This document shows, in pieces, positions 7,901 to 33,400 of a DNA stretch of 64,000 bases. The position numbers were made by a program, and so were the translations under genes. The stretch is from Macrostomum lignano. Taxonomy: Eukaryota. The DNA is taken from positions 1 to 64,000 of the forward strand of contig NIVC01000677.1 in NCBI GenBank assembly GCA_002269645.1, in the 5' to 3' direction. Position 1 is the first letter of the stretch, and the number at the start of each line of letters is the position of its first letter. The notes beneath the pieces are model-generated. The model searched no databases, was not told the origin of the DNA, and saw nothing but the letters and a program-made list of their open reading frames with translations.

Positions 7901-8489
7901 CTGTACCAATAATGGAATTGATACCAAAACGAACATGGACGAGGAATGATTTGGAAACACTGAACGCCATGCGAAGGAAGGACGCGATTCGCTACAACAG
8001 TACAGCTGGGATTTGAAACCACTGGAGACTGGAGAGCAAGTCTGGTTGTACGAGGACAAGAGACAGTGGATTCCAGCAGAAATTAAATCGCAGGATCATA
8101 CGGATCCAGAACGATCGTACCAAGTGCAAACTGCTGATGGTAAAGGCTACAGGAAGAACCGACGATTCATAGCACCCAGAGTTGCGAACTCCAGACTGTC
8201 TGCAATACCGAAACATCTAGCGCTACAGCGACCAGTAGATATCTCAGAGAGTCATCTGAAAGATTCAACTGCATCATCCAGAATTCAGCCAATTCATGAG
8301 CATCAAACAACAAGCAATCCTGCTGAAGATGCTAACCGACAAACGACCAATGCTGACACAAATGCGCCATATGTGACACGATCGGGTCGGGTCGTACTGT
8401 CAAACAGACGAGATTCCATCAAGCTGTTTAATGACGAATTTTTTTTGTTTATGGACAAAATATGCAATTCGCGTACAATGTTCCTTTGA
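5000..8489 (+). pseudogene. pol: gypsy pol: RT, RNase H and integrase fragments
   Basis: PKVQDPRKVPFA...WVSNVVIVWKKDNSIRLCLD; LRFLGHIL; LSVDASKDGLGAALLQ...YAQIEKEMLAIVFG; TDHKPL; LRCDNGPPFSS...SSPRYPQSNGLAERAVQTVK; SPAELLMGRKLR; RSYQVQTADGKGYRKNRRFI. Confidence 0.9.
7284..7843. mobile_element. Non-autonomous foldback/MITE with minisatellite-built TIRs and a 9-bp TSD (Mutator-like)
   Basis: The left arm has (CGGACATTTGCCCTC)n and the right arm has (GAGGGCAAATGTCCG)n. GTGGGTTAC is duplicated at 7275-7283 and 7844-7852. Removing the element restores integrase ...TPIERGLPSPAELLMGRKLR. Confidence 0.9.
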
Positions 8490-9099
8490 AAAAAAGGGGA
8501 TGTGGTAGCCAGCCGCTTTAGTTTCTTATTCATGCATACATGATTGTTTATGAACAAACTCAAATATACTTGTAAAGGGGTGTGGCTGCGCCCAGTCTCG
8601 CCAAGCGCAAATACTCCTAATACATGCAAACACACAACACCCCCGACCAATTTTCATGCACAAGCCCCGAATGAAAGTGGCCGCTCGCGGAATCGAACCA
8701 AGGCCTGTGTCGGCGCACTTTTAAATACCTTGATTAATTTAACAAACTGGAGACTGCAAGCAAAGTTATAGATCGATCTCTCCAATGTATTATTTTTCAC
8801 AGATCCATCAGTTATAAAAAAACTAATAATAAACTAAACTAAACTAAAAACTAAAAAAGCTAAACCAATTAATGAAAAATACAATTAACTATTTACATGT
8901 ACCAATAAACATGTAACTTTGGCAATTCGAAACTGGTTTATTTTAAATGCTAATCCTGTCAGACAACATACTTGTCAGCCTGTAAATGCTAGTAGCACGG
9001 ATGCCCGATCACGGGATGTTGAATTAAAAGGTAGCTGGAGTTGAATACGCCAGGTTATTCTCGAAGTATTCTCCACGGGATCTTCCAGGTTCAATAGGG

Positions 9100-9700
9100 A
9101 GATTCCCCAGGTTGCAGAAGGAGATTCCCCAGGTTGCAGAGGGAGATTCCCCAGGTTGAAGAGGGAGATTCGGATTCCCAGGTTGCAGAGGGAGATTCCC
9201 CCGGTTTCAGGAGATTCCCCAGGTTGCAGGAGATTCCCAGGTTGCAGAGGGAGATTCCCCAGGTTGCAGAGAGGATATTCCCCAGGTTGCAGAGGGAGAT
9301 TCCCCAGGTTGCAGAGGGAGATTCCCCAGGTTGCAGAGGGAGATTCCCCAGGTTTCAGGAGATTCCCCAGGTTGCAGGAGATTCCCCAGGTTGCAGAAGG
9401 AGATTCCCCAGGTTGCAGGAGATTCCCCAGGTTGCAGAGGGAGATTCCCCAGGTTGCAGGAGATTCCCCAGGTTGCAGAAGGATATTCCCCAGGTTGAAG
9501 AGGGATATTCCCCAGGTTGGAGAGGTAGATTCCCCAGGTTGAAGAGGGAGATTCCCCAGGTTGGAGAGGGAGATTCCCCAGGTTGAAGAGGGAGATTCCC
9601 CAGGTTGGAGAGGGAGATTCTCCAGGTTGGAGAGGGAGATTCCCCGGGTTGAAGAGGGAGATTCCCCAGGTTGCAGAGATTCCCCAGGTTGAAGAGGGGA
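9100..9700. repeat. Minisatellite, ~20-23 bp (GGGAGATTCCCCAGGTTGCAGA)
   Basis: Tandem units; overlapping ORFs are repeat translations. Confidence 0.95.
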
Positions 9701-9779
9701 CTATTGAAAGGAGATTTCACGATGCTAGATCCCAGGAGATTCAGATTGCAGCAGGTCTAGAAGGCTATGGCCGAATGGC

Positions 9780-12485
9780 TCAACCGGCCAGCAGGGCCGC
9801 TGCCCCGTTAGCCAGCTGGCTGGCCAGGGTGACGCGCCTCAGCACGGCCTCTCGCACGGGCCGGCCGGCTGGCAGGCGGTCGCCGAACTTCTGCATAAAC
9901 TTGTCCGGATGCCACAGCACCCGCAGCTGCCGAAGCTCCGTCACCAAGCCTTCGGCGTCGCCCCCCACAGCCAGCCGAAGCCATCGCAGTGCGGCCTCCG
10001 GCCCAACGGCAGAGTCGATCAAAAACGGCGGCCAGGGCACTTCGTCGACGCTGTCAATAACGGATTTGGATTGGAAGAATGCCAAATAGGAGTCCTTGTA
10101 ACGCAGGTAGGCCTCGCATTCGGGGCGGCCGATGGCGTGTCGGCCAGTTTCAACTGTTTGCACTGTCGCTGCTGCCGAGGTGGCGGCTGCTCCGGAAGCT
10201 CTGCCGCAGCCGCACGCTGCTGCCGCTGACGCTGCCGACGCTCGGCGTACTCGCGGCCGATCCTATCGAACCAATCGTCCAGAGTTTCGAAAGTCCAAAA
10301 TGCCTCCCCTTCGTCTTGGAAGAATCCGGCGCCATCGTTGTCATCGTCAGCGTCGTCGGCGGCGGCGTCGGCCAGTCGACGCTGCCAGATGATTGTTTCG
10401 CTGTTGTCGGCGTCGCGCTCGTCGATGTCGGCCGTCAGCGCGGCGTCCGCGGCGGCCGAAGTTGCCGCCTCCTGGTCGGCCAGACGGTCGAGCAGACGCT
10501 GGCAGGAGACGCCGGCAGAGTTGCAGAGCCGGAGCAGCTCAGCCCGCCGGCCGGGGCGCTGGCAGCCCAGCAGGTCGGAGAGCAGCCGGTCCGCGACTGC
10601 TCGGGGGAGGGAGTTGGTTAGCAAGCTGTTTGGTGGGCCAGTTAGTGTCTAGACTGGCAAGATATCAGAGATTAGATTAGAGTGGCAAGATATCAGAGAC
10701 TAGATTTTAATAGCTAGATGCCAGAGACTAGATTAGAGTCGCTAGATGCCAGAGACTAGATTAGAGTCGCTAGATGCCAGATACTAGATTAGAGTAGCTA
10801 AATGCCAGAGACTAGATTAGAGTCGCTGGATGCCAGAGACTAGATTAGAGTAGCTAGATGCCAGAGACTAGATTAGAGTCGCTAGATGCCAGAGACTAGA
10901 TTAGAGTAGCTAGATGCCAGAGACTAGATTAGAGTCGCTAGATGCCAGAGACTAGATTAGAGTAGCTAGATGCCAGAGACTAGATTAGAGTAGCTAGATG
11001 CCAGAGACTAGATTAGAGTCGCTAGATGCCAGAGACTAGATTAGAGTAGCTAGATGCCAGAGACTAGATTATAGTTGCTAGATTAGAGTAGCTAGAAGCC
11101 AGAGACTAGATTAGAGTCGCTAGATGCCAGAGACTAGATTAGAGTAGCTAGATGCCAGAGACTAGATTAGAGTAGCTAGATGCCAGAGACTAGATTAGAG
11201 TAGCTAGAAGCCAGAGACTATAGATTAGAGTCCAACTCAGAAGAAAGTGACAGCAGAACTCACTGACAGGAGACTTGCCCGTCTGCAGGCAGTGGTACAG
11301 TATCAGGTGGACCGGCGTGTTTCCGTGAACGTCTTTGGCCTCCAAGCTGCAGCCAAGCTCCGAAAAGGTTCTAAGAGGGGCAATAGAAATTGCTTCGTCA
11401 AGTGAAGGACACTCAGGTTTTATTGATCATGTAAGCTGTCATTTCTGACTCATCGCTCTCTTCTGATTCACAGTATCTAACTCATCTGTCTTCTCTGACC
11501 CATAAAATCTGACTCATCTGTCTTCTCTGACCCACAGTATGTGACTCATCTGTCTTCTCTGACCCACAGTATGTGACTCATCTGTCTTCTCTGACCCACA
11601 GTATGTGACTCATCTGTCTTCTCTGACCCATAAAATCTGACTCATCTATCTTCTCTGACCCATAGTATGTGACTCATCTCCATCTTCTCCGACTTACAGT
11701 ATGTGACTCATTTCTATGTTCTCTGACCCAAAGTAGCTGAATCATCTTCTCTGACCCACAGCAGCTGACTCATCTTCTCTGACCCACAGTAGCTGAATCA
11801 TCTTCTCTGACCCACAGTAGCCGAATCATCTTCTCTGACCCACAGTAGCTGACTCATCTTCTCTGACCCACAGTAGCTGAATCATCTTCTCTGACCCACA
11901 GTAGCCGAATCATCTTCTCTGACCCACAGTAGCTGACTCATCTTCTCTGACCCGCAGTATGTGAGTCATCTTCTCTGACCCACAGTATGTAAATCATCTC
12001 TCTTCTCTGACCCACAGTAGCTGACTCATCTTCTCTGACCCGCAGTATGTGAGTCATCTTCTCTGACCCACAGTATGTAAATCATCTCTCTTCTCTGACC
12101 CACAGTAGCTGACTCATCTTCTCTGACCCGCAGTATGTGAGTCATCTTCTCTGACCCACAGTAGTTGACTCATCTTCTCTGACCCACCGCATTTGACTCT
12201 TGTGAACCATATAACCCAGTTTATTGACTAACTTAATAAATTGTTTGCGGTTCCTTAATATCTCATTTCCGACTAATCTCGAAATTCGCACCTAATTAAC
12301 CCGCCGTGGCCCTCAGCAGCGGCCAGATGCAGGAGACTTCGCCCATCTTCATCCCGATAATCTGGCACGTTGTCGGAGGCTGACCGCTTCATCTTATCCA
12401 GACGCTTGGAGACACGCCGGAATCGACCTGACCGAGTGTACTTGGCCAGCTTGCGCAGGTGACAAGACTCTCTTTGTCGCTTCAT
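9780..12485 (-). CDS. NFKBIL1: NF-kappa-B inhibitor-like protein 1 homolog (ankyrin repeats + WHPD C-terminus); 3 exons, two apparent compensating frameshifts in exon 3
   Basis: Exons 12292-12485, 11264-11370 and 9780-10648 have GT-AG borders and total 1170 nt. Ankyrin segments DEDGRSLLHLAAAEGH and DVHGNTPVHL; FETLDDWFDRIGREYAERR; DEVPWPP; LRVLWHPDKFMQKF...VTLASQLAN all match NFKBIL1 motifs. Confidence 0.82.
10660..11230. repeat. 28-bp intronic minisatellite (GAGACTAGATTAGAGTCGCTAGATGCCA)
   Basis: Fills NFKBIL1 intron 2. Confidence 0.95.
11450..12190. repeat. ~28-bp intronic minisatellite (CATCTTCTCTGACCCACAGTAGCTGACT)
   Basis: Fills NFKBIL1 intron 1. Confidence 0.95.
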
Positions 12486-12609
12486 CGTTCCGCTGGAGCA
12501 GAGCTCAACAGGGGTAGCGCTGCAACCGCGTACACGTACATACGAGTAATATAGAGAATTATATACACATGGATAAGGGATTCTTCAATGCGTTTGATTA
12601 ATTCGAGGT

Positions 12610-13540
12610 TGGAAGGACATTCTCAAGGTTGCAGGAGATTCTCAAGGTTGCAAGGAGATTCTAAAGGTTGCAGGGAGATTCTCAAGGTTGCAAGGAGATT
12701 CTCAAGGTTAAAGGGAGATTCTAAAGGTTGCAGGGAGATTCTCAAGGTTGCAAGGAGATTCTCAAGGTTAAAGGGAGATTCTCAAGTTTGCAGGGAGATT
12801 CTAAAGGTTAAAGGGAGATTCTCAAGTTTGCAGGGAGATTCTAAAGGTTGCAGGGAGATTCTCAAGGTTGCAAGGAGATTCTCAAGGTTAAAGGGAGATT
12901 CTCAAGTTTGCAGGGAGATTCTAAAGGTTAAAGGGAGATTCTCAAGTTTGCAGGGAGATTCTCAAGGTTGCAAGGAGATTCTCAAGGTTGCAGGGAGATT
13001 CTAAAGGTTGCAAGGAGATTCTCAAGGTTAAAGGGAGATTCTCAAGTTTGCAGGGAGATTCTATAGGTTGCAAGGAGATTCTCAAGGTTGAAGAAAGATT
13101 CTCAAGGTTGCAGGGAGATTCTCAAGGTTGCAGGGAGATTCTCAAGGTTGCATGGAGATTCTCAAGGTTGCAGGGAGATTCTCAAGGTTGCAGGGAGATT
13201 CTAAAGGTTGCAAGGAAATTTTCAAGGTTGAAGGAAGATTCTCAAGTTTGCAGGGAGATTCTATAGGTTGCAAGGAAATTCTCAAGGTTGCAGGGAGATT
13301 CTAAAGGTTGCAAGGAAATTTTCAAGGTTGAAGGAAGATTCTCAAGGTTGCAGGGAGGTTCTCAAGGTTGCAGGGAGATTTTCAAGGTTGCAGGGAGATT
13401 TTCAAGGTTGCAAGGAGATTCTCAAGGTTAAAGGGAGATTCTAACGGTTGCAAGGAGATTATCAAGGTTGCAGGGAGATTCTAACGGTTGCAAGGAGATT
13501 ATCAAGGTTGCAGGGAGATTCTAAAGGTTGCAGGGGGATT
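12610..13540. repeat. 20-bp minisatellite (GGGAGATTCTCAAGGTTGCA), related to the 9100-9700 array
   Basis: Tandem units sharing GGAGATTC...AGGTTG. Confidence 0.95.
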
Positions 13541-14463
13541 TTACAGGCTGAAGTTAGACTCTTAAGCTGACAAAGCGACACAATTGCATCAAAATCTAGC
13601 AATTTATTTGTTCCGCAGAATGCAATACTACTATGGCTAAAATCTAATTCCATCAGTAATATTAACATAAATACAACAATTTTCCAAATGAAAAAGACTA
13701 ATTTAACAAAGAAACAAGCCTTCGTTTCGCTACTGTTTTTCACTCGTTAACTTTGTGACTAGTTGATGCAGCAGTTTTTGTCTTTTATATATATATATGA
13801 TAGGTATATGCACAAGTATATTTTTAATTTGAGAGTTGACCATGCCGAGCACATTATCGTTACGTTTTAGGCTTTCATAGATTAATTTCTATGGCAGGAG
13901 ATTAACTAATAACTACACTGGGAGACAGGTGCAGAGGGTTTGAAAGGTTATATTTATCTTAAGCAATCAAATAACTACACTGTACTAGTACAGATACCCT
14001 TGTATTTAAAGCAGGTTTATGTGACAATCTCTATGTTATGCAGTCACGTGGCCCAAGGTTAATAAAACACAGATATAGTAATAATAAGTAAAGCAATATA
14101 GAAATTCATAGTGTAACAGCGGTTATTTGAAAAATACCATGGTAAACATACGTAAGCAGAAGCGATATTGATTGCAAAGCGCGATATAAAACACAAACAA
14201 GAGAGAGATAGACAGACAGACAGACAATACAAAACACATACACAATGTGGCCAATAATGTACAACTGTTTAGGAGTGTGCTAGGGGCTAGGCTTATTTTA
14301 CATAGCAAATAGGATTTTACTAAGCTATTGTCAAACCCTGATTTTTCCGTTTAGAAAACATGAACAAGCCTATTGGTACAATTTTACATATTTAGAGAAG
14401 TCTAATATCTAATAATAATTGATTACAACTTCCCTAATAGGCAGCAAGGAGAAGGATGGGAAT

Positions 14464-14901
14464 GGGAAACTACGTTTCTCAGAAAAAGTTAAGGAGGCTG
14501 GTTTTCGCCGAAAAATACACTACGGAGATAGGAAGTCTTCAAATTTTCAGCACAAAAATTGTTATTGCTTTCAATAGGAGGCAAATCCAATGTTCATCTT
14601 TTGATATGTTGTGCCTTTCTTATTGCTCTATCGATATTCAGGAAGCTTTTCGTTTAGAAAATTAGGATTCTATGTTAAATTTTCATTCGACACACATTCC
14701 CTGTACCTAAATCATAAAAATGCATGGCACAACTTGGCTCTTTAGTTTTATGAATATAATCATTTCACAGATTTTATCATTTCTGTTACACATATTGTCA
14801 CACAATGAGATAAGAAGGATAAAATAGATAAATAGTCCCTATCTCCGTAGTGTATTTTTCGGTAAAAAACCAGCCTCTATTTCTAATAAAAGTAGTTCCC
14901 C
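14464..14901. mobile_element. MITE-like relic with ~40-bp inverted repeats
   Basis: GAGGCTGGTTTTCGCCGAAAAATACACTACGGAGATAGG (14494-14532) is inverted at 14838-14877; the outer GGGAAACTAC/GTAGTTCCCC also pair imperfectly. Confidence 0.65.
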
Positions 14902-14909
14902 GCCCTTCT

Positions 14910-15197
14910 ACTCGAGTTGTGCTTGATGGCTAGATGTGCAACCGACAGCTCAGCCGCAGCTATTGCGCGGCGCATCTGAAGGCTGCGTACGGCTGTTCAG
15001 TCCAAGGACTGGGGGTCGCCACACATCCTCAATTACCCCAGCTAATGCTGGCACCCATTTCACAGCTGGGTGAACTGAAGCAATGCAAAGAGTTTAATGT
15101 CTTTCTCAAGGACACAAATTGTACCGATTGGGTCGAGAATCGAACCCCCGACCTTTCAGTCGCGACTCCGACGCTCTAACCACTGGGCTACATCCCC
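14910..15197 (-). mobile_element. tRNA-derived SINE
   Basis: The minus strand starts GGGGATGTAGCCCAGTGGTTAGAGCG...GGTTCGATTCTCG (A and B boxes). It continues TGTGTCCTTGAGAAAGACATTAAAC...CACCCAGCTGTGAAATGGGTGCC, a body typical of metazoan conserved-core SINEs. Confidence 0.82.
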
Positions 15198-16139
15198 TTC
15201 TTATAGAAGTCTGACTGTGCTAAGGTTCAAAAGTCCAAGTAAGGTGCTAAAGTCCAATCTAATTGCCTACATGGTGGACCTGCCCGCTCTCCTTGACACC
15301 CGTGCAGTCGATGCAACACCGCAGCAAGATTGCAAAATTTTCGACAAGGAAAATTCGATATAAATAAAATGGCTGTACAGACGGATACACACGCACAGAA
15401 CTAAAAAAACAATAAAAGACAAATCGATATAATAACAACAACAATGCAATCCCATTCGATGCATTTGTACAAGCTAGATAAATAAACCGATCAAGCGAAC
15501 AAAGAAACAAACAACAATTTTGATTTATTTCGCCGTCCTTAAACTTCGAACAGCCGGGTGAATGCTTAGTTGAGATCGGCTAGGACTATAAAACAGATTT
15601 AACCAAGTCACGCTGAGAATCTCTAATTAAAGAGATTTCGAAAATCAGTTGAAGAAGCGGATTGTGAAACTTCAGAATAGTTAATGATTGAGGCCAAGAT
15701 TATACACAGAGCTCTCATCGAATTACTAGGCTGGCCAATTCAAAGCGGAAACAATATGGGACAGAACACCATTAGATAAACAAGCAGGCAAAAATGAAAC
15801 AACAAACTGTAAGAGTAAACGCATGTCAGTATTATATAATATATAATAATAACTAAATATAAGCTACATTAGCGCAGACAAACGAAAACAAGCATAGTTA
15901 ATGAAGCTCTGCCAGCTCTCTGAGTCTTGGTTCCAAGCAATAACAAAGACCTACGCGCTTGCTGCACTGGATAGGGAGATCAATAAATGAAACACACGTA
16001 AGCAAACGTGCTAAGTTGCATATTGTTGCGCTAACCGCTGAGACTACGAGCGTAAATATGAAGACGGCACAGATGGGGATAAAAACAAAAAACGCTTCAG
16101 TTAACTTGGGCGGTTCTCTATAAGTAGGGATTTGAATTT

Positions 16140-17160
16140 GGATTCTAAGCACTGCAGTTGGGATTCTAAGCACTGAAGTTGGGATTCTAAGCACTGAAGT
16201 TGGGATTCTTCTAAGCACTGCAGTTAGGATTCTTCTAAGCACTAAAGTTGGGATTCTAAGCACTGCAGTTGGGATCTAAGCACTGAAGTTGGATTCTAAG
16301 CACTGAAGTTGGGATTCTCTAAGCACTGAAGTTGGGATTCTTCTAAGCACTGAAGTTGGGATTCTAAGCACTGAAAGTTGGGATTCTAAGCACTGAAGTT
16401 GGGATTCTAAGCACTGAAGTTGGGATTCTAAGCACTGCAGTTGGGATTCTTCTAAGCACTGCAGTTGGGATTCTAAGCACTGAAGTTGGGATTCTTCTAA
16501 GCACTGAAGTTGGGATTCTTCTAAGCACTGAAGTTGGGATTCTTCTAAGCACTGAAGTTGGGATTCTAAGCACTGAAGTTGGGATTCTTCTAAGCACTGA
16601 AGTTGGGATTCTAAGCACTGCAGTTGGGATTCTTCTAAGCACTGCAGTTGGGATTCTAAGCACTGCAGTTGGGATTCTAAGCACTGAAGTTGGGATTCTT
16701 CTAAGCACTGAAGTTGGGATTCTAAGCACTGAAGTTGGGATTCTTCTAAGCACTGAAGTTGGGATTCTAAGCACTGCAGTTGGGATTCTTCTAAGCACTG
16801 CAGTTGGGATTCTTCTAAGCACTGCAGTTGGGATTCTAAGCACTGCAGTTGGGATTCTAAGCACTGAAGTTGGGATTCTAAGCACTGCAGTTGGGATTCT
16901 TCTAAGCACTGAAGTTGGGATTCTAAGCACTGCAGTTGGGATTCTTCTAAGCACTGCAGTTGGGATTCTAAGCACTGCAGTTTGGATTCTTATAAGCACT
17001 GCAGTTGGGATTCTAAGCACTGCAGTTTGGATTCTTCTAAGCACTGAAGTTGGGATTCTAAGCACTGAAGTTTGGATTCTTCTAAGCACTGCAGTTGGGA
17101 TTCTAAGCACTGCAGTTTGGATTCTTATAAGCACTGAAGCTGAGATTCCAAGCACTGAAA
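16140..17160. repeat. 21/24-bp minisatellite (GGGATTCT[TCT]AAGCACTG[A/C]AGTT)
   Basis: Tandem units with two binary variant positions. Confidence 0.95.
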
Positions 17161-17485
17161 TTGGGATTTTAAGAGAGTAAACTTCTAATACAGAATTCTA
17201 GTAATTAAATAAATATAATCAACCTTTTCCTTCAAGCTCAAGAAGACCTGTGGAGTTCACCCGAAGAAGCAATGCATTCTGCGCAAGCGAAAACAAATAA
17301 ATAAGACAATTCAGTAGCAAGGGCCAGATAGGACACAAAAAACTTAGGAGAGAAAGCCTGGTGGGTTTATTAGAGAGCATCAGAAATCCAAGCACAAATG
17401 ATTCAACACTGGTCTATAAGAGCAAGAGAGGCGGAGCGCATAAAGCCGCAAGAGGCGACAAGGCCAACTGGGAGACACAGGTCAG

Positions 17486-20400
17486 TCAGGGTGCAGAGCC
17501 GCCCTCGCCACCGCCAGACTGATCGCCCCCGAAGCTCTTGGTCTTGGACAGCAGCATCTCCGCTATGAGGGTGTTGCGGGGATTTTGCCAGTGCGCAGCT
17601 TGTCAGTCAGGTAGCATTCCAGCTTGAAGGCCAGGTACTTGATCTCCGGCAGTCTCAACAGAATCTTGCCAAATTTGTCCGCCTGCTGCGGCGAATTCTC
17701 CAGGATATAGTCCAACAGTGAGCAGCTGATTTTGAACTCAACAGTGCTTACAAAGTCCGCGTTGTGCTTTAGCATGATGTCTGCAGTGCGATTGGGGTAG
17801 GCGGATTGTGTTTGCTTCTGTCTGTCTGCCCTAGTGTCCACCTGTGTGTCTGTCTGCCTTAGTGTCTACCTGTGTGTCTGTCTGCCTTAGTGTCTACCTG
17901 TGTGTCTGTCTGCCCTAGTGTCTACCTGTGTGTCTGTCTGCCCTAGTGTCTACCTGTGTGTCTGTCTGCCTTAGTGTCTACCTGTGTGTCTGTCTGCCTT
18001 AGTGTCTACCTGTGTGTCTGTCTGCCTTAGTGTCTACCTGTGTGTCTGTCTGCCTTAGTGTCTACCTGTGTGTCTGTCTGCCTTAGTGTCTACCTGTGTG
18101 TCTGTCTGCCCTAGTGTCTACCTGTGTGTCTGTCTGCCTAGTGTCTACCTGTGTGTCTGTCTGCCTTAGTGTCTACCTGTGTGTCTGTCTGCCTTAGTGT
18201 CTACCTGTGTGTCTGTCTGCCTTAGTGTCTACCTGTGTGTCTGTCTGCCTTAGTGTCGACCTGTGTGTCTGTCTGCCTTAGTGTCTACCTGTGTGTCTGT
18301 CTGCCTTAGTGTCTACCTGTGTGTCTGTCTGCCTTAGTGTCTACCTGTGTGTCTGGTTGCCTTAGTGTCTACCTGTGTGTCTGTCTGCCTTAGTGTCTAC
18401 CTGTGTGTCTGTCTGCCCTAGTGTCTACCTGTGTGTCTGTCTGCCCTAGTGTCTACCTGTGTGTCTGTCTGCCTTAGTGTCCACCTGTGTGTCTGTCTGC
18501 CTTAGTGTCTACCTGTGTGTCTGTCTGCCTTAGTGTCTACCTGTGTGTCTGTCTGCCTTAGTGTCTACCTGTGTGTCTGTCTGCCTTAGTGTCTACCTGT
18601 GTGTCTGTCTGCCTTAGTGTCTACCTGTGTGTCTGTCTGCCTTAGTGTCTACCTGTGTGTCTGGTTGCCTTAGTGTCTACCTGTGTGTCTGTCTGCCCTA
18701 GTGTCCACCTGTGTGTCTGTCTGCCTTAGTGTCTACCTGTGTGTCTGTCTGCCCTAGTGTCTACCTGTGTGTCTGGTTGCCTTAGTGTCTACCTGTGTGT
18801 CTGTCTGCCTTAGTGTCTACCTGTGTGTCTGTCTGCCTTAGTGTCTACCTGTGTGTCTGGTTGCCTTAGTGTCTACCTGTGTGTCTGTCTGCCCTAGTGT
18901 CCACCTGTGTGTCTGTCTGCCTTAGTGTCTACCTGTGTGTCTGGTTGCCTTAGTGTCCACCTGTGTGTCTGTCTGCCTACCCACCAGTTACGAAACAGTT
19001 AAGCCCTTTATTCCCCGCAAACAGCAGCCAAGGCCGCTACACAGGCCATCCGTACCGTGCTTTCCCGCATTAAACATGAGCAGAAACTTGAGCGCGGCAA
19101 ACTCGCACTTGTCCAACCGCAGGCTCTGCACCCGCTCAATTAGATCCATCAGGCGCAGCTTGACCTCGGACAGGTCCAGCAGGTCGAGAATATCGGCGGA
19201 GTGGTTCAGCTGAGACGAGTACTGCAGTTGCATTGATGGCGGATAGAATTACAAAAACAATAATCTTGCCAGACATATACAATTCTACCCAACTTACCCA
19301 ACTCGATTCGATGCTGTCCTTTCTATTGTCGTGGACGCAGTGGTACAGGTATTCCAATAAGAGAATTTCTCCCCAGCTGCTATTCAGTAGCTGCATTTGG
19401 TCTTCAACCTGGAGTGAAAAAAACAAAAACGCTGATGGAAACACAGTAGAAATGAAGAGATGAAAGGAGAGAGGAGACAAGAAGGTAAAGGAGAGAGGAA
19501 GGGAGAGGAAGGGAGGGGAGAGATAAAGGTAGAAGGCAAGAGAGAGGAAGGGAGAGGAAGAGAGACAAGAGATGAAGGTAGAAGGCAAGAGAGAGGAAGG
19601 GAGAGGAAGAGAGACAAGAGATGAAGGTAGAAGGCAAGAGAGAGGAAGGGAGAGGAAGAGAGACAAGAGATGAAGGTAGAAGGCAAGAGAGAGGAAGGGA
19701 GAGGAAGAGAGACAAGAGATGAAGGTAGAAGGCAGAGGAGAGAGAGGAAGGGAGAGAGATGAAGGGAGATGGGAGAGGAAGGGAGAGAGATGAAGGGAGA
19801 GGGGAGAGGAAGGGAGAGAGATGAAGGGAGAGGGGAGAGGAGAGATTAAGCGGGAGAAAGGAATGGAGGAATGGGGAGGGCAAGGGAGAGGAGGGAGGCC
19901 CGGAGTTGAGCTTATCGAGTCTAACCAGCAGTCCAAAACAGAAAAAATGGCAGAGTCCAGGAGTATGCAAAAAAACTCACCGACACAACCTTGAAGTAAT
20001 CGGCATTTCTAGCCCAGTCCACCAATGTGAACAGCGCCTGCTCCAAGAAGCAGCACAGGTTGTGAAAGAGGCTCTCAGGCTCTGTCAGATTGGGTATGAG
20101 TTGTTTTTCCACGAATTCGTTGATACTGTCCAGCTTCTTGCTCGCTTTAGCGTCGTAAGCCGTGATTCGCTCGATGATGACGCGGGTGGTTTCAACGCCG
20201 CCAGTCGACGAGGAAGCAGCCGCGGTCCCGGCTGAATCGACGCCGCTTAGCTGCGGATGCTGAGACACCGGCGGCATCTGCTGATGGTGCTGAAGCGGAT
20301 GCTGCTGCTGCTGTTGTGGTTGGTGTTGCTGATGGTGCTGCTGGGACTGCTGATGATGATGCTGCTGCTGGTGGTGGTGCTGCTGTTGATGCCCCAGGTT

Positions 20401-20937
20401 GGGTAGCGCTAGAAGAGCCTGCGGCCCAACGGCGCCCAGCGGTCCTGGCAGACGCGGCATCTGCTGGGCAGCGGCGGCCGCTGCCGCTGCCAGGTTGGGT
20501 TTTACATCGGCGGGCCCGCTAGCTGGAAAGAAGGCCGCGGCGGCAGCGGCTGCGGCGGCGGATCCGCCACCTTGGAGGGCGGCCTGCTGCGCCTCCCAAG
20601 ACTGCTGCGAGCCGGGGAAACCTGCGGCGGCGGCAGCGGCGGCGGCGGCTGCCGCGGCGGCGGATGAGACGGAAGCGCCACCTGCGCCACCGCCGCCATG
20701 GTGGTGCCCGCCAGCCTGGCTAAGCGCCGGATGGGCGGCGGTGAGTCCGGGGAACATCGCCTGGGAACCGAAGGGCGCGCCGTGCGGCCCGTGCTGATTG
20801 GCTGAGCCAGCAGACGGCGGCGGCGGCTGCGGCTGATGATGATGAGGCGGATGAGGATGCTGAGGAGGCCCGGTGCTGAAGCCGAGCATGTGATTCCGAT
20901 TGTCCATGAGCGCGCCCGGCTCAGATTTAAAGTTCAT
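17486..20937 (-). CDS. ftz-f1: Nuclear receptor, NR5A/FTZ-F1-type ligand-binding domain with a low-complexity N-terminus; no DBD seen
   Basis: Exons 19990-20937(20943), 19298-19408, 19056-19221 and 17486-17780 have GT-AG borders. Motifs: LEQALFTLVDWARNADYFK|VEDQMQLLNSSWGEILLL, LRLDKCEFAALKFLLMFN, LLDY...DKFGKILLRLPEIK and AF-2 NTLIAEML. One base is missing in the G run at 17578-17581. Confidence 0.85.
17815..18975. repeat. 28-bp intronic minisatellite (TGTCTGTCTGCCTTAGTGTCTACCTGTG)
   Basis: Fills the last intron of the nuclear receptor. Confidence 0.95.
19450..19890. repeat. GA-rich intronic tandem repeat (~49-bp and ~24-bp units)
   Basis: GAAGGTAGAAGGCAAGAGAGAGGAAGGGAGAGGAAGAGAGACAAGAGAT repeated. 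Confidence 0.9.
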
Positions 20938-21370
20938 GGCGCTCTATTGAAACAATGGTTCTTCTGTCTCTCTGTTTATTTCGTACTGGCTGCAAATGGG
21001 TTTCAGTAAATTTTGTGGTTGCAATGGCCGGCGGGAACCGCTGCCATGCAATCGATTATAAGACATATTTTTATTCATTTTTAATACATTTTTCATACCA
21101 TGCTACAGAGGTAAGTTGCTTTTCAACAACAATAATAATCTACAACTAAATGAACAAGTAAGTGCAAATACATGGCCTATTTTTAGTGACTAAAATTGTA
21201 ACAGAGATAGGATAAGTTCCAAAATTGATGACTTAGAGACACAAAAAGCCAATGTATGACTCTATTGATTTTAAATTGCCAAATAAGGGTTTTAATATAG
21301 CACTTTTATTCAAACTTTGCTGAAATTGCTCAAATGCTACCCAAAAAATCCTCCCAACTTTGACTAACTA

Positions 21371-22135
21371 TAGCCTTTTGCAGCCCATTTGGGCCTCGCG
21401 CATTGAATTTAATCGAAGATACGTTTCCAATGTAACGGAGCTTTTGTCTATGGTAGCAAGGCTGGCACAGCGGCATTTAATTTGGTCCAACAAGCATCAA
21501 TTTGGTCCAAACGCTTGTGCAGAGCCATTCGGCAAACTCTTGCCTTCTGGCAACCGTCTGCAGGTGGTTGCGTACCGCTTGAATGTCAGCGTCTCTACCA
21601 ACAATTTTCTGTCGCTTTTCCAGAGCTCTGCTGATAGTCAAAATTGATAACCAACTGGATCTGTTTCTTCAACTTCTGCTGCATTTTCTGCAACGTCAGC
21701 AAAAGGTTCGTCTCAACTGCATCGAGTAGCAGTTGGACCTGAAACTCTCGCAACTTGCTTTGGCGATTGCCACCCTTTCGCAGGTGACCTCTGCCGGCAG
21801 TGGTTTCAATGCGCTGATGAATGTTGTAAACGATATTTTCTTCTATATTCAGCAACCTTGCAATGTTCTTTGGGTGTTCACCTCTATCGAGCGCTTCGAT
21901 CACAACAAGCCAATGGCATTCGTTTGACAGCCTAGCATTTCGTCCACAATTCTGAGGCTGATCTTGCTCCTCCGCAGCAGTTGCAAATGAAGCTATGGAC
22001 CAAATTGATGCTTGTTGGACCCAATTAAATGCCGCTGTGCCAGCCTTGCTACCATAGACAAAAGCTCCGTTACATTGGAAACGTATCTTCGATTAAATTC
22101 AATGCGCGTAAGCCCAAATGGACTGCAAAAAGCTA
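21371..22135 (-). mobile_element. Internally deleted Tc1/IS630-like DNA transposon with ~150-bp TIRs
   Basis: 21371-~21520 is the inverse of ~21990-22135, with TA at both ends. The minus strand encodes an HTH-like transposase N-terminus (ARLSNECHWLVVIEALDRGEHPKNIARLLNIEENIVYNIHQR...GGNRQSKL) with no DDE domain. Confidence 0.8.
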
Positions 22136-27595: not shown

Positions 27596-29423
27596 TATAA
27601 TTGGGTTAAAGCTACCTATAAATGGAGCTCAAATTTGAAATCAGCACCATCAAAAACCCCTATAGAGACAAAATTATGATCTTATCAAAATTGAAACTAT
27701 TTTATCAACATAAACTTGAAGAAGTCCTGTTTGTAAACTATCTAAATTACAATATATACCAAAAATAGAAATAAATGGTCAAACAAAAATATATTTGCTT
27801 TATCAATAATCTAGCATATTTATTATTGAATTTACAATGGACATGGTGAATGGTCCAATCCTTGATTCTTTATGACTTTGACCCCATGCTTAGCAAAAGA
27901 TTGAAAATTAGTCAGAAATTGAAATCAAACATACAGGTTTCAAAATGCTAAATCTTAAATTATTATGCCTATTCATTTAATCGATATTGTTATAGCCTAG
28001 AGTTAGGCCCTATTATTTAACAATAAATAATGGTTTATTGTTGATCGTTGTGTACTTGAAAACTGCTTGCAAAATTGCTTTGTAAAATGTTCTAAGGGTT
28101 ATGGGACGCACATTGGTCAATAATAGAATTAAAAAAATATCTTAGACTCGAACTTTGCTCAGTAATACTAACTACTAGGCCTGGCAATAGCAATAGTTTG
28201 CACTGTCATATTGATTCGATTGATTTAATAACTAAAGTGGATGAATTGTGTATACACATCTGAGAAAAATCATTCTACCTACGAAGGTAAACATGTATTT
28301 TATTATACTCAATAAATACTAAATACGAGAAGATTAAAGATCGTATTATTAACAATCTGCCGTTTTGAGGAGGGTCGATCGATCTCGTTATTTATTATTT
28401 AATAACGGAAATTGAAATCAATTTAACCTAAAGGTGAATACATAAACAAATATAAAATACACTAAATACACATATGACAAAAATATTTCAGAAGCTGGAG
28501 AAATATAGTTATTTTTATTCAAATACAAGAAATTCAAACTTATTGTTACTTTTCACGATTTAGTGAATTTTAGTCCTAATATCAATACGAATACATGCAA
28601 TTCCTGAACTTAAGAACAGCGTTTTCTGTTTTGCCTCATTTTTACAGTTGTATGATAAAAATGACATCTAAAATTCATTTCAATTTTGTCAAATGTTGCA
28701 TATATTTTCGTCAACAGCAACGACTGCGAATTACGATTCAAATAAAGTTGTGTCGCAAATTGAAATGCTTAGCGATTGAAATAAAGTAGTTTCTCCGTGT
28801 AGTCGAGAATTGTGCGTTTAATTTTTGCAAATTACTTCATATTTTAGAATTTACTGATCACTACAAAACTTGAGTTACGAGGTCTTAGATTCGCCCAAAT
28901 GCCTATCAATTTTGATCATAAAAACTTTTAAATATATTTTACAAAATAAGCGAATTAGACTACATGTAAATAAATGTATACGTTAGTCTGAACTATGGAC
29001 TGCGAAAATGCTCTTTACATTATATTTGTGTATAGTTTAGCAATCAGTGATAATTACTGGCGTACGATGCATAGTCATTGATTAATTTACAAAAAGCACA
29101 AGCAAACGTGATAAAACCACTTTACATCAATCACATAATGAGAATTCGCGATTATTGCAAGTACGAAAGATTTCAAGCACTAAATATCCAGACATAAATT
29201 TACAAGTACAACATATACTATTAATTACATGCAGATGATGATACTGCTACAAATACCCATTGAGTAAGTAATTAATGAAACATTTTTTTCTACAAATAGT
29301 CATGCATGTACAATTTCACTATGCATGTTGCATGCATGTTCACACTGAATTAATGACTGTCCCAGGCTTAAAGCGACTTAGTAAAAGTGGAGTACAGGAG
29401 GATATCAATGCCCCACAGCGAGT

Positions 29424-30251
29424 TCACTGTTCATTAGCCTTCTCCGTTTCCATGGGAACGTCCTTCAGCTGCGGCTGCTCCCGAGCTGCCGGAGCCTCGA
29501 ACGGCGCCTCGATGTACAGCCGGCCATCGTGGCTGAGCTTGCTCACCACCTGGTCCAGCTTGGTGCCGTCGGGCAGCTGGTAGATTCGCTCCAGCCGCTT
29601 GTGGACCCGCTGCCCGCCGGCCTCCTCCTTGTGCTCCGCCTCCACCAGCACGCAGTCGCCCTGCTGTCGCACGCGAATCTCGTCCGGCTTGAACTCGCGC
29701 ACCGACAGCTCCGCCTTGAACCGCTTGCTGCCATCGTCCGCCTCCACCAGCTGGCCGGACCCCTCAGACTGCAGGTCGCCTCGCAGCAGGCCGCGCAGCT
29801 CGTCCCACACGGAGTCGCCCTGCGGTTTCTGCTGCTGCTGCTGCTGCTCCTGCTGCTTCAGCTGCTGCTGCTTCTGCTGCTCCTTGAACGGCGCCTGCAG
29901 CACCAGCATGCCGTCCCGGGTGAAGCCGCTGTTCAGCTTCTCTGCGTCCACTTCCTCCGGCAGCTCCACCGTCCGCTTCACCTCCGTCACGTCCTCGCCG
30001 TTCTCCAGCCGCGCCACCACCCGCACCTTCCGCTCCTCCCGCTTCACCGACACGTCCTTCGGCGAGAAGCCGCGAAGGTCCACAGTCCGGCTCCACTGAC
30101 GCGGTCGCCTCGGACCTCTGTGCCGCAGCAGCTGCACCAGCGGGTCATACTCCGGCGTCAGCCAGTCGTCCAGCTCGCTCATGGCTGCCACTAGCGGCAG
30201 AGAGTGCGAGAACGGCGTGTACACGTTGCTCGGTGCGATCCACAGAGACAT
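29424..30251 (-). CDS. Small heat shock protein with two alpha-crystallin domains (p40/Tsp36-like), copy A, 275 aa
   Basis: RTVDLRGFSPKDVSVK...RTVELPEEVDAEKLNSGFTRDGMLVLQAP and FKAELSVREFKPDEIRVR...RIYQLPDGTKLDQVVSKLSHDGRLYIEAP. The start is the first ATG downstream of the TATA box; the longer ORF in the track runs through the promoter. Confidence 0.95.
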   Translation of the reverse strand: MSLWIAPSNVYTPFSHSLPLVAAMSELDDWLTPEYDPLVQLLRHRGPRRPRQWSRTVDLRGFSPKDVSVKREERKVRVVARLENGEDVTEVKRTVELPEEVDAEKLNSGFTRDGMLVLQAPFKEQQKQQQLKQQEQQQQQQKPQGDSVWDELRGLLRGDLQSEGSGQLVEADDGSKRFKAELSVREFKPDEIRVRQQGDCVLVEAEHKEEAGGQRVHKRLERIYQLPDGTKLDQVVSKLSHDGRLYIEAPFEAPAAREQPQLKDVPMETEKANEQ

Positions 30252-30373
30252 GCTTGCTGTGTCGCTTGTAAATGATAGAGTTTGGCGATTGATTCGCTTT
30301 GCTTGAGATTGCTTTGCTTGCGGTTGCTTTGTGTGCTCGAATCCTGTCTCACTCTCGGATCCAGCTGTCTCGC

Positions 30374-30444
30374 TTTTATAGACTGGCACTGAGGAAGCTT
30401 CTCGAATTTTCTCGCCCACTGACTCATTCTGGAAATTTCTAGAA
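30374..30444 (-). promoter_or_regulatory. Heat-shock promoter A: TATA box + two 4-unit HSEs + TGAGTCA (AP-1-like)
   Basis: TATAAAA (reverse complement at 30374-30380); GAAgcTTCtcGAAttTTC at 30394-30411; TTCtgGAAatTTCtaGAA at 30427-30444. Confidence 0.9.
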
Positions 30445-32870: not shown

Positions 32871-33400
32871 CTTTGCATTGTTTTTCTGTTTGACGATCCT
32901 ACAGACAATGCATTTTCAATTTTCAATTCCAATTCCAAAAAGAGAGGAGAGAGAATTAAGGAAATATGAGAGAAGAGAGAGGAGAGGAGAAGGAAAAGAG
33001 TAGAAAGAAGAGAGGAGTGATAGAAAAGTGGAGATGGATGAGAAGAGTGAGGAGAGGAGAGAAGTTTTAAAGGCCGCAAATCTAATTTAATACACATTTA
33101 CTCCAATTTTTGTTTTGCTCTATCTTCTCAGAAGAAGATAGATATCTTCTCTATCTTCTCTTCACTTACAAGTGTTTGTTTGAGTATGACTTTAGATTTA
33201 AGAATGCATGTAAAAACAGTTCCGGGGATCGGAATTCAGCGGGTTCAAAATCCGCGGGTTTCAACAGCTCGTGTGACATAAAATTGCACATAGATTGTTA
33301 CTAGTTTCCGCACAAAGGCTATCGTTGACAAAATTGTGTTTCATCTACTAACAGTAGAAATATGAACTTTTGCTGTCTAAATTTGGGTTAGCGGCTCGAT

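What the first reader, a model, noticed from the sequence alone, without database searches (positions are those of the whole stretch)
17486..20943. NR5A/FTZ-F1-type receptor with no DNA-binding domain upstream
Seen: a complete NR5A-like LBD follows ~250 aa of Gln/His/Ala low complexity. The first exon has an AG acceptor 6 nt before a strong GCCATG (TTGTTTCAATAG|AGCGCCATG). I found no C4 zinc-finger or FTZ-F1-box exon by eye in the 43 kb upstream, which holds TE relics and unrelated genes. Known: flatworms use spliced-leader trans-splicing at such acceptors, and DBD-less receptors (NR0B SHP/DAX1) act as repressors of NR5A proteins. Inference: this may be an independently evolved LBD-only NR5A. 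The exon is also phase 0 and open (SAMNFKSE), so a distant or mis-assembled DBD exon remains possible.
Basis: partly seen in the sequence, partly recalled or inferred. Interest (0 to 1): 0.72.

Follow-up and report, generated by a model that had tools for sequence, protein, structure and literature searches.

The report
Flatworm NR5A receptor gene without DNA-binding domain
This is the Macrostomum lignano counterpart of the FTZ-F1/SF-1/LRH-1 nuclear receptor, and it seems to encode only the hinge and ligand-binding half; that would explain why surveys call this receptor "lost" in the species, but no transcript shows the 5' end and this copy has a one-base frameshift before its last helix.

Summary
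A four-exon, minus-strand gene (17486-20943, all introns GT..AG) encodes about 250 aa of Ala/Gln/Pro/Gly/His low complexity followed by a ligand-binding domain (LBD). The LBD sits with 100/100 bootstrap support inside the flatworm NR5A (FTZ-F1) clade, not with NR5B/HR39. The organism is Macrostomum lignano.

No DNA-binding domain (DBD) or recognisable relic exists anywhere in the 64 kb, by tblastn, regex and a profile HMM with positive controls. The 43 kb upstream holds two sHSP genes and an MFS transporter. Published DBD-based surveys of M. lignano list 61 receptors and no NR5A DBD, stating "FTZ-F1 is missing". Hymenolepidid tapeworms, also reported to lack the DBD, likewise keep an NR5A-clade LBD gene.

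One correction: the LBD is not complete as written. The CDS is 1529 nt. A missing C in a C-run (17578-17581) stops the frame at ...GKIPATPS*, leaving helix 12/AF-2 out of frame. Two UniProt models from the species are intact there.

The best reading is a DBD-less NR5A acting off DNA through its LBD. This is unproven, because no transcript data could be reached and LBD-only gene models can be annotation splits (shown here for Cichlidogyrus).

The parts
20944..20955 (-). 3' splice site TTGTTTCAATAG (AG = 20945-20944) just before exon 1. It is a candidate spliced-leader trans-splice acceptor or cis acceptor. Its TAG closes the reading frame for unspliced RNA.
   Evidence: Read directly. The M. 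lignano SL ends ...TTGCATG (PMC8629364), so SL-ATG + AGCGCC + ATG is in frame. Use of the site was not tested.
20990..20996 (-). Alternative acceptor TTTGCAG, 53 nt upstream of the ATG. If it is used, the exon starts with 5'UTR: frame 0 is closed by TAG, and the SL ATG would open a short out-of-frame uORF.
   Evidence: It matches the published top trans-splice motif [T/C]TNCAG.
19981..20943 (-). Exon 1. It holds a 6-nt leader and the ATG at 20937, about 250 aa of A/Q/P/G/H-rich hinge-like region, then LBD helices 1-3. It ends ...DWARNADYFKVVS|GTGAGT in phase 0.
   Evidence: The intron position after helix 3 is the same as in the Dicrocoelium NR5A gene (FKVIP|VKDKMQLL).
19409..19980 (-). Intron 1 (572 nt), mostly CT-rich tandem repeats with periods of 31, 49 and 147 nt.
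19298..19408 (-). Exon 2 (111 nt): VEDQMQLLNSSWGEILLLEYLYHCVHDNRKDSIESSW (helices 4-5).
19056..19221 (-). Exon 3 (166 nt): YSSQLNHSADILDLL...CEFAALKFLLMFNAGKH. It follows a 76-nt intron 2 (19222-19297).
17781..19055 (-). Intron 3 (1275 nt), almost wholly a 28-nt tandem repeat of 41.5 copies (17819-17978... 18978).
17486..17780 (-). Exon 4: helices 9-12. The frame from exon 3 stops at TAG 17565-17563. The stop at 17488-17486 belongs to the frame that carries helix 12.
   Evidence: (two tblastn pieces, 17781-17578 and 17581-17543, overlap by 4 nt).
17578..17581 (-). C-run (CCCC) one base shorter than needed to read GKIP-RNTLIAEMLL. It is either a frameshift or an assembly indel.
   Evidence: CDS 1529 nt. 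UniProt models A0A1I8IIH6 and A0A1I8ILM2 read GKIPRNTLIAEMLLSKTKSFGGDQSGGGEGGSAP without a break.
17549..17569 (-). AF-2 / helix 12 core LIAEMLL, out of frame in this copy.
   Evidence: It forms a helix at 315-327 in the AlphaFold model of P0002.
17366..17371 (-). AATAAA polyadenylation signal about 115 nt after the stop at 17486.
   Evidence: Read directly.

Best explanation
The locus is the Macrostomum lignano orthologue of the flatworm NR5A (FTZ-F1 / SF-1 / LRH-1) receptor. It has been reduced to hinge plus ligand-binding domain. It is a compact gene of its own: 4 exons over 3.5 kb, with an ATG 6 nt after a 3' splice site and an AATAAA 115 nt after the stop.

The mRNA most likely gets its 5' end by spliced-leader trans-splicing, at 20943 or 20989, rather than by cis-splicing to zinc-finger exons. 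M. lignano would therefore make an NR5A protein of about 509 aa that cannot bind DNA by itself.

Inferred mode of action: the LBD keeps the NR5A fold, the coactivator charge clamp (Arg in helix 3, Glu in helix 12) and the Tyr/Lys that hold a phospholipid head group in SF-1/LRH-1. It can therefore still dock LxxLL-type partners and perhaps a lipid. The Ala/Gln/His/Pro-rich N-terminus serves as a disordered effector or activation region. Without a DBD it would work off DNA or tethered. Either it is recruited by other transcription factors through the AF-2 groove, or it competes with the remaining NR5 receptor (MlHR39) and others for co-regulators.

The copy in this window carries a 1-nt deficit in front of helix 12. 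This is either an assembly indel in a homopolymer or a very young null or AF-2-less allele. Intact copies exist in the species.

Shown: gene anatomy, orthology, absence of a DBD in the window, and the frameshift. Taken from the literature: absence of an NR5A DBD from the genome. Inferred: trans-splicing, expression and mechanism.
For: Gene anatomy:
- Exons and splice sites are as described.

NR5A identity of the LBD:
- PDB matches to LRH-1 at 3e-33, SF-1 at 5e-28 and FTZ-F1 at 3e-26.
- An exhaustive HMMER search gave as best foreign hits mollusc NR5A2-like proteins and trematode NR5A proteins that carry ESCKG DBDs.
- HR39-type proteins first appear at E 2.4e-15.
- The NJ tree places it in the flatworm NR5A clade with 100/100 bootstraps.
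- The AlphaFold model has pLDDT above 90 over the LBD, and its best structural matches are LRH-1, SF-1 and FTZ-F1.
- The helix-3 WAR and the Y..K of helix 11 align with LRH-1.

No DBD:
- Searches found none, with positive controls.
- Upstream on 43 kb lie a transposase relic, two HSP20 genes (29427-30464 on the minus strand, 33381-34418 on the plus strand) and MFS transporter exons at 38.6-42.1 kb.
- The gene's own introns are 76-1275 nt. The species averages 1.1-1.4 kb per intron and 7.5-9.4 kb per gene, and 38.8% of genes are trans-spliced (PMC5730564).

Literature:
- The 61 M. lignano DBDs listed hold no NR5A type, and the only ESCKG P-box is MlHR39 on another scaffold.
- All three UniProt models of this gene lack a DBD.

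Parallel case:
- Hymenolepis microstoma CDS32730.1 and Rodentolepis nana VDN97032.1 are NR5A-clade LBD proteins of 765 and 771 aa without a DBD.
- No DBD is found on the 24-kb R. nana contig.
- Their family is also reported to lack the FTZ-F1 DBD.
Against: - No RNA evidence was obtainable. Exact-sequence look-ups of ten guessed products and three window ORFs found nothing.
- Exon 1 is open in phase 0 from the acceptor (SAMNFKSE), so a coding exon could be joined there.
- Trematode orthologues keep their DBD 50-75 kb upstream of the LBD exons.
- An LBD-only model in Cichlidogyrus is a split annotation, with the DBD 8 kb upstream.
- AATAG does not match the commonest trans-splice motif.
- The gene is absent from the protein-based survey of Cheng et al., as tabulated in PMC8363021 S5. 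That may mean it is unannotated or weakly expressed in Mlig_3_7.
- This copy is frameshifted before AF-2.
- A perfect 1788-nt inverted repeat lies 8 kb upstream, and the genome is known to be repeat-rich. Local mis-assembly therefore cannot be excluded.
Confidence: 0.55

Rival explanations
1. It is an ordinary full-length NR5A gene. The zinc-finger and FTZ-F1-box exons exist but lie more than 43 kb upstream, or in sequence missing or misplaced in the assemblies, and are cis-spliced onto 20943.
For: - The acceptor is phase 0 and open.
- Orthologues in trematodes have the DBD 50-75 kb from the LBD exons.
- The Paragonimus model also lacks its DBD within 10 kb.
- The Cichlidogyrus LBD-only model is a split annotation.
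- The M. lignano genome is hard to assemble, and a perfect inverted repeat lies 8 kb upstream.
Against: - Two surveys of two assemblies, ML2 at 1040 Mb and Mlig_3_7 at 764 Mb (both redundant), found no NR5A-type DBD at all, even as half-domains.
- The transcriptome BUSCO score is 98%.
- The intron would have to be over 30 times the species mean and would swallow at least three other genes on both strands.
- A Met codon in good context sits at codon 3 of the exon.
Confidence: 0.2
2. It is a dead or dying relic. After the DBD was lost the remaining hinge and LBD gene has no function, and the frameshift before helix 12 is real pseudogenisation.
For: - The CDS is 1529 nt, with a premature stop at 17565-17563.
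- The gene is not listed among the annotated NR proteins of Mlig_3_7.
- The species is a hidden polyploid with redundant copies.
Against: - The LBD keeps 35-50% identity to orthologues across the whole domain, including the AF-2 core and the intron position.
- The 30 codons after the shift are still open and identical in protein to the intact models.
- All splice sites and the poly(A) signal are intact.
- A single-base deficit in a homopolymer is the typical error of a PacBio-based assembly.
Confidence: 0.17
3. It is a chimeric or divergent arrangement. The LBD is joined in the mRNA to a non-NR5A-type DBD encoded elsewhere, such as the HR39-type MlFTZ-F1b or the atypical MlUn10/11 (P-box EACKS, CRFQKCL).
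For: MlUn10/11 are about 55% identical to both the trematode NR5A DBD and the ERR DBD. Those DBDs sit on other scaffolds whose relation to this window is unknown.
Against: - No DBD of any type is in the window.
- HR39 is retained as a full receptor in all flatworms analysed.
- Cheng et al. grouped MlUn10/11 with NR3.
- Domain phylogenies would have to disagree.
Confidence: 0.05

Closest known systems
Flatworm NR5A / FTZ-F1 (Schistosoma FTZ-F1alpha type; e.g. Dicrocoelium CAH8611537.1 at 1260 aa, S. japonicum TNN17936.1 at 1796 aa)
   Same: The LBD is orthologous (100/100 bootstrap clade). Signature stretches are shared: MQLLNSSW.EI.LLEYL, CLKFL.LFN.AKHD, L.EVKYLAF.LE, TGKIP...L..EMLL.K. The intron after helix 3 is in the same place. 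A long low-complexity region precedes the LBD.
   Different: Those proteins start with an ESCKG zinc-finger DBD and a GGRSRRG box 800-1300 aa before the LBD. None is found here. This gene is 3.5 kb, against 50-95 kb in trematodes.
Hymenolepis microstoma HmN_000456520 (CDS32730.1) / Rodentolepis nana VDN97032.1, uncharacterised 'NR LBD domain-containing proteins'
   Same: They are NR5A-clade LBDs preceded by about 390 aa without a DBD. Their lineage is one where DBD surveys report FTZ-F1 as missing. No DBD is on the R. nana contig.
   Different: They come from a different flatworm class, so any loss would be independent. They are gene models only, and I found no paper that describes them.
NR0B1 DAX-1 / NR0B2 SHP
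   Same: They are LBD-only nuclear receptors that act by protein-protein contact with other receptors, NR5A among them (from established knowledge; PDB 1yuc, 3f5c and 1zh7 appear among the structural matches).
   Different: Their LBD belongs to another subfamily. They dock through N-terminal or internal LxxLL-like boxes and act as repressors. Here the LBD is NR5A itself and the N-terminus has no LxxLL or CoRNR box.
Ctenophore nuclear receptors without a DBD (Mnemiopsis; PMC3038971)
   Same: They are genome-encoded NR LBD proteins with no zinc-finger domain.
   Different: They resemble NR2A, and the state may be ancestral. Here it would be a secondary loss inside a well-defined bilaterian orthology group.

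Membership tests
NR5A (FTZ-F1 / SF-1 / LRH-1) | The LBD groups with NR5A LBDs to the exclusion of NR5B and other subfamilies | tested here: met
   (100/100 with flatworm NR5A, 0/100 with NR5B). Structural matches.
NR5A (FTZ-F1 / SF-1 / LRH-1) | C4 zinc-finger DBD with the ESCKG P-box | tested here: not met
   None in 64 kb by tblastn, regex or profile HMM with controls. None of NR5A type in the published M. lignano DBD list.
NR5A (FTZ-F1 / SF-1 / LRH-1) | FTZ-F1 box (C-terminal extension, ...RMRGGRNKFGPMYKRDR) | tested here: not met
   The GGRNK regex and tblastn queries that included the box found no hit.
NR5A (FTZ-F1 / SF-1 / LRH-1) | AF-2 helix 12 (LLxEML) in frame with the LBD | tested here: inconclusive
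   LIAEMLL is present but out of frame in this copy. It is in frame in UniProt models P0001 and P0002.
NR5A (FTZ-F1 / SF-1 / LRH-1) | Phospholipid pocket with head-group Tyr/Lys on helix 11 | tested here: inconclusive
   Y and K of 'YLtdK' align with 'YLyyK' of LRH-1. Lipid binding itself cannot be tested here.
NR5B (HR39) | The LBD groups with HR39 LBDs; the DBD has GIFSCESCKG and RKKCPACR | tested here: not met
   The first HR39-type hit is at E 2.4e-15, against 1.8e-33 for NR5A. It is never sister to NR5B.
NR0B (DAX-1 / SHP) | LBD-only architecture | tested here: inconclusive
   Met at the level of the window. The mRNA 5' end is unknown.
NR0B (DAX-1 / SHP) | NR0B-type LBD and LxxLL-like boxes outside the LBD core | tested here: not met
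   The LBD is NR5A. The only LxxLL is LKFLL inside the LBD core.
SL trans-spliced genes of M. lignano | SL-containing reads ending at a 3' splice site with no upstream cis donor | not testable with these tools
   Only the sites can be seen: AATAG at 20944 and TTTGCAG at 20990. The SL sequence and motif come from PMC8629364.

The most novel reading that the evidence does not exclude
NR5A/FTZ-F1 was not lost in Macrostomum lignano, nor in hymenolepidid tapeworms. In both lineages, independently, it was converted into an LBD-only receptor. This would be a SHP/DAX-like co-regulator invented from NR5A itself. It would then act on the remaining NR5 receptor (HR39) or other partners without touching DNA, possibly still sensing a phospholipid.
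Probability: 0.4. Interest if true: 0.72.

Novelty: new variant of a known kind. Interest (0 to 1): 0.56.

Why it matters
Nuclear-receptor inventories of flatworms are built from the DBD. They report FTZ-F1/NR5A as lost in M. lignano and some tapeworms.

If the LBD half survives as a gene of its own, the "loss" is really a change of architecture. It would be a second, independent route to a DBD-less receptor besides vertebrate NR0B. That gives a natural experiment on what an NR5A LBD does without DNA binding: co-regulator titration, tethering or lipid sensing. M. lignano has RNAi and transgenesis, so this can be tested.

It also warns that DBD-only surveys undercount receptors. Conversely, LBD-only gene models need checking against flanking DNA.

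Tried and rejected
Transcript or other-copy evidence through the protein collections:
- Two homologous-protein searches, with the LBD and with the N-terminus, gave only the two UniProt fragments.
- A search with the MlHR39 DBD returned only short DBD fragments and not the M. lignano protein.
- Exact look-ups of P0001, P0002, P0068, the exon-1 and exon-4 genomic ORFs, and ten guessed products found nothing. The guesses covered intact and frameshifted forms, starting at M1, Met11 or the SL ATG.

SL-like sequence upstream:
- AATCGATTGCATG at 21045-21057 is at chance level, with 29 matches against 27.7 expected. I dropped it.

Hinge motifs:
- FKSE at residues 3-6 resembles the SF-1 'GFKLE' SUMO site just after the FTZ-F1 box. 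PADVKPN at 141-147 resembles the P.DVKPD of mollusc NR5A hinges. The same motif also occurs in RXR and HR39, so it is too short and generic to say where the exon would sit relative to a DBD.

Literature:
- Wudarski 2017 supplements hold no NR5A entry.
- No paper links Macrostomum and NR5A2.
- Cheng et al. 2021 is not in the library.

Cichlidogyrus:
- I first took the Cichlidogyrus LBD-only model as a third precedent. I rejected it after finding its DBD 8 kb upstream.
Full report
WHAT IS THERE

The finding lies on the minus strand. Reading 21200-17300, translating three frames and locating junctions gives a four-exon gene.
- Exon 1 is 19981-20943, with the ATG at 20937.
- Exon 2 is 19298-19408.
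- Exon 3 is 19056-19221.
- Exon 4 is 17486-17780.
- All three introns are GT..AG and measure 572, 76 and 1275 nt.
- An AATAAA lies at 17371-17366, about 115 nt after the last stop.

Upstream of exon 1 is TTGTTTCAATAG|AGCGCCATGAAC. The AG is at 20945-20944. The TAG it forms closes the frame for unspliced RNA, and the first ATG follows 6 nt later in GCCATGA context.

The first 246 residues are 21% Ala, 15% Gln, 12% Pro, 12% Gly and 11% His. They contain no basic cluster and no LxxLL or CoRNR box.

CORRECTION TO THE OBSERVATION

The spliced CDS is 1529 nt, which is not a multiple of three. As the sequence stands, the frame coming from exon 3 ends at TAG 17565-17563 (...LRTGKIPATPS*, 483 aa). The helix-12/AF-2 segment RNTLIAEMLLSKTKSFGGDQSGGGEGGSAP* is in another frame. 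It starts right after a run of four C (17578-17581).

tblastn with human SF-1 shows the same thing: two pieces, 17781-17578 and 17581-17543, overlap by 4 nt.

Two UniProt models from the same species, A0A1I8IIH6 and A0A1I8ILM2, are 99% identical and read GKIPRNTLIAEMLL... without a break. Intact copies therefore exist. The 30 codons after the shift are still open and identical in protein to those models.

A one-base deficit in a homopolymer is what a PacBio-based assembly error looks like. Mlig_3_7 is a Canu assembly polished with Pilon. A real, very young frameshift in one of the redundant copies cannot be excluded.

ORGANISM AND IDENTITY OF THE DOMAIN

The only close database proteins are three Macrostomum lignano 'NR LBD domain-containing proteins'.
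- P0001 and P0002 are 5'-partial and start at PGALMDN.
- P0068 (A0A1I8JP56) starts at Met11. It is frameshifted and runs on into the next gene of this window at about 10.0-10.6 kb.

The domain evidence is as follows.
- Pfam PF00104 matches at E 2e-23.
- Among solved structures the best sequence matches are LRH-1/NR5A2 (3e-33), SF-1 (5e-28) and Drosophila FTZ-F1 (3e-26). RXR follows at 4e-20.
- An exhaustive HMMER search of 1.84 billion representatives gave as best foreign hits NR5A2-like proteins of molluscs (Biomphalaria, Babylonia), a brachiopod and a nemertean. It also gave the trematode NR5A proteins of Dicrocoelium, Paragonimus, Calicophoron and Schistosoma japonicum (names).
- Those that are full length carry an ESCKG P-box DBD of FTZ-F1 type.
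- Proteins with HR39-type DBDs (GIFSCESCKG, RKKCPACR) first appear at E 2.4e-15.
- A neighbour-joining tree of 117 LBDs puts the window's LBD as sister to a flatworm NR5A clade, inside NR5A and apart from NR5B.
- In 100 bootstrap replicates, M. lignano plus seven flatworm NR5A-clade sequences were monophyletic 100 times. The sister group was never NR5B.
- Signature stretches are shared with the trematode proteins.
- The intron after helix 3 (FKVVS|VEDQMQLL) is at the same place as in the Dicrocoelium gene (FKVIP|VKDKMQLL).
- An AlphaFold model of P0002 with 39 homologues has pLDDT above 90 through the LBD, with helix 12 at 315-327 and a disordered N-terminus. Its best structural matches are LRH-1, SF-1 and FTZ-F1 LBDs.

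The LBD is therefore the M. lignano orthologue of flatworm NR5A/FTZ-F1. It is not the LBD of HR39.

IS THERE A DBD?

Not in this window.
- tblastn with SF-1 (full length), FTZ-F1, RXR, trematode NR5A and MlHR39 DBDs gives nothing below E = 0.7, and nothing credible.
- Regexes for both zinc fingers, the P-box and GGRNK in six frames hit only poly-Cys low complexity.
- A profile HMM built from 75 DBDs, run with all filters off on 2876 six-frame fragments, has a best E of 0.53.
- Control DBDs with 50-60% of residues randomised still score 1e-12 to 1e-6. A half-domain with 30% randomised scores 1e-14.
- The window has no N runs.

Upstream of exon 1 on the same 43 kb lie:
- about 8.4 kb without gene-like ORFs apart from an HTH transposase relic at 21595-22092;
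- two identical small-heat-shock genes in a perfect 1788-nt inverted repeat, at 29427-30464 (minus) and 33381-34418 (plus);
- exons of an MFS transporter at 38589-39365 and 41492-42109 (minus).

An intron reaching a DBD outside the window would have to span all of these. In M. lignano introns average 1.1-1.4 kb and genes 7.5-9.4 kb, and this gene's own introns are 76-1275 nt.

EVIDENCE FROM OUTSIDE THE WINDOW

Wu and LoVerde (PLoS One 2021, PMC8363021) catalogued receptors by DBD in both M. lignano assemblies. They list 61 DBD sequences with their scaffolds. The corrected Table 2 (PMC11637366) has no NR5A entry for M. lignano and one NR5B entry. That entry is MlFTZ-F1b/MlHR39, on scaffold 303, protein PAA86663.1.

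Their comparison with the survey of Cheng et al. 2021 also shows no NR5A there. None of the 17 'divergent' DBDs is of NR5A type. MlUn10/11 (EACKS, CRFQKCL) are about equally distant from the NR5A and ERR DBDs by my hand count.

The published picture is therefore that NR5A was lost, judged by the DBD. This window shows that the LBD half is still there.

A PARALLEL AND A WARNING

In the LBD tree the nearest sequences to M. lignano include Hymenolepis microstoma CDS32730.1 (765 aa) and Rodentolepis nana VDN97032.1 (771 aa). These are proteins with about 390 aa and then an NR5A-clade LBD, and no DBD.
- The R. nana gene (L001, 6119-20882) has no DBD anywhere on its 24-kb contig.
- Its upstream neighbour is another gene on the opposite strand.
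- Hymenolepididae are one of the lineages in which the FTZ-F1 DBD is reported missing.

This is a second case of the same pattern.

The warning comes from the monogenean Cichlidogyrus. It also has an LBD-only model (P0088), but its contig carries an NR5A-type DBD and box 8 kb upstream on the same strand, called as separate small genes. That model is a split annotation.

In trematodes the DBD exons lie far from the LBD exons. In Dicrocoelium they are at 2-23 kb, against LBD exons at 76-97 kb of a 95-kb gene. In Paragonimus no DBD lies within 10 kb of a 50-kb model. Distance alone is therefore not proof. The argument rests on M. lignano's compact genes, the intervening genes and the genome-wide absence of the DBD.

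THE 5' END

The M. lignano spliced leader is CGGTCTCTTACTGCGAAGACTCAATTTATTGCATG, and 30-39% of genes receive it. Joined at 20943, its terminal ATG is in frame (ATG AGC GCC ATG AAC gives MSAMNF...).

The published top motif at trans-splice acceptors is [T/C]TNCAG. The site at 20944 (TTTCAATAG) does not fit it. A second site at 20996-20990 (TTTGCAG) does. If that site is used, the frame is closed by the TAG, so the exon would be 5'UTR plus start codon and a cis-joined DBD would be impossible.

Neither site can be tested here. An SL-like 13-mer at 21045-21057 is at chance level.

HOW IT MOST LIKELY WORKS

Shown: there is an NR5A LBD gene with its own start codon, splice sites and poly(A) signal, and no DBD nearby. 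Helix-3 WAR and helix-12 E (the coactivator charge clamp) are conserved. So are the Y and K on helix 11 that hold the phospholipid head group in SF-1/LRH-1 (alignment). The N-terminus is disordered and Ala/Gln/His/Pro-rich.

Inferred: the mRNA is trans-spliced and translated from M1 or from the SL ATG. The protein cannot bind the NR5A response element. It acts through LBD contacts, in one of two ways. It may be tethered to DNA by partners that insert an LxxLL helix into the AF-2 groove, as Ftz does with FTZ-F1 (from established knowledge). Or it may compete for co-regulators with MlHR39 or other receptors, with the N-terminal region as an effector module. Schistosome FTZ-F1 is reported to interact with RXR1 (Bertin et al. 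2005, listed), so a receptor partner is plausible.

I put 0.55 on the DBD-less-gene reading as a whole. The particular mechanism deserves less.

RIVALS
- A normal gene whose DBD exons are outside the window or missing from the assemblies: 0.20.
- A relic without function, with a real frameshift: 0.17.
- A chimera with a non-NR5A DBD encoded elsewhere: 0.05.

COMPARISON WITH WHAT IS KNOWN, AND NOVELTY

By its LBD the gene belongs to NR5A. By architecture it fails two defining NR5A features, the DBD and the FTZ-F1 box. It resembles NR0B (DAX-1/SHP) only in being LBD-only.

I found no paper describing an LBD-only NR5A in flatworms. The proteins exist in UniProt only as unnamed 'NR LBD domain-containing' entries.

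I rate it a new variant of a known kind, conditional on transcript proof.

VERDICT

Interest is 0.56.

Noticed in passing
window 28784-30571 and 33274-35061: A perfect (100%) 1788-nt inverted repeat with a 2702-nt spacer. Each arm carries an identical small-heat-shock (HSP20/alpha-crystallin, apparently two-domain) ORF, at 29427-30464 (minus) and 33381-34418 (plus). An unannotated 323-aa ORF (30901-31869, plus) sits in the spacer. It is either a real inverted gene duplication or an assembly fold-back.
   Followed up: partly
window 17819-18978 and 19454-19841: The introns of the receptor gene are almost entirely tandem repeats. Intron 3 holds a 28-nt unit in 41.5 copies at 96% identity. Intron 1 holds CT-rich units of 31, 49 and 147 nt.
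   Followed up: partly
A 14-codon uORF (ATGGCAGCG...TGA) lies just upstream.
   Followed up: partly
window ~10022-10648 (-) and UniProt A0A1I8JP56 (P0068): The UniProt model A0A1I8JP56 is a frameshifted chimera. It starts at Met11 of the receptor, skips the last exon and continues into the ORF at about 10.0-10.6 kb (shared string LLDRLADQEAATSAAADAA). That ORF belongs to an unidentified downstream gene.
   Followed up: no
window 6200-7453 (+): A relic of an LTR-retrotransposon pol gene. It has a weak RNase H tail match (6200-6880) and an integrase core match (6926-7453, PF00665, E 1.5e-6).
   Followed up: no
window 38589-39365 and 41492-42109 (-): Exons of a major-facilitator-superfamily transporter (PF07690, E 5e-7 and 1e-3). 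They lie on the same strand as the receptor gene, 18-21 kb upstream of it.
   Followed up: no
window 36.2-37.6 kb, 44.9-45.4 kb, 56.5-57.9 kb, 59.0-59.8 kb, 61.4-64.0 kb, 0.1-3.0 kb: Very long simple or tandem arrays that give open reading frames in several frames at once. Examples are (CAGACAGA)-type 'DRQT/CLSV' arrays, 'IYLS' arrays and a roughly 27-nt 'VNSVYLVTL' array that runs off the window end. They fit the repeat-rich M. lignano genome but inflate ORF lists.
   Followed up: no
L004 (Cichlidogyrus casuarinus JBJKFK010000180.1) 983-2774 and 10001-10996: One NR5A gene is annotated as several separate genes. The zinc-finger DBD is at 1757-2035 with an intron inside the P-box region, the RMRGGRSK box is at 2282-2335, and the single-exon LBD is 8 kb downstream.
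   Followed up: yes
L001 (Rodentolepis nana UZAE01000418.1) 6119-20882; Hymenolepis microstoma CDS32730.1: Tapeworm NR5A-clade LBD proteins of 765-771 aa have no DBD in the model or on the contig. They come from a family reported to have lost FTZ-F1. I found no description of them in the literature I could search.
   Followed up: partly
window 21595-22092 (-): A short ORF with weak helix-turn-helix matches of transposase type (PF13551, PF13384, E about 0.006-0.009), 650 nt upstream of the receptor's exon 1. It is probably a DNA-transposon relic.
   Followed up: no
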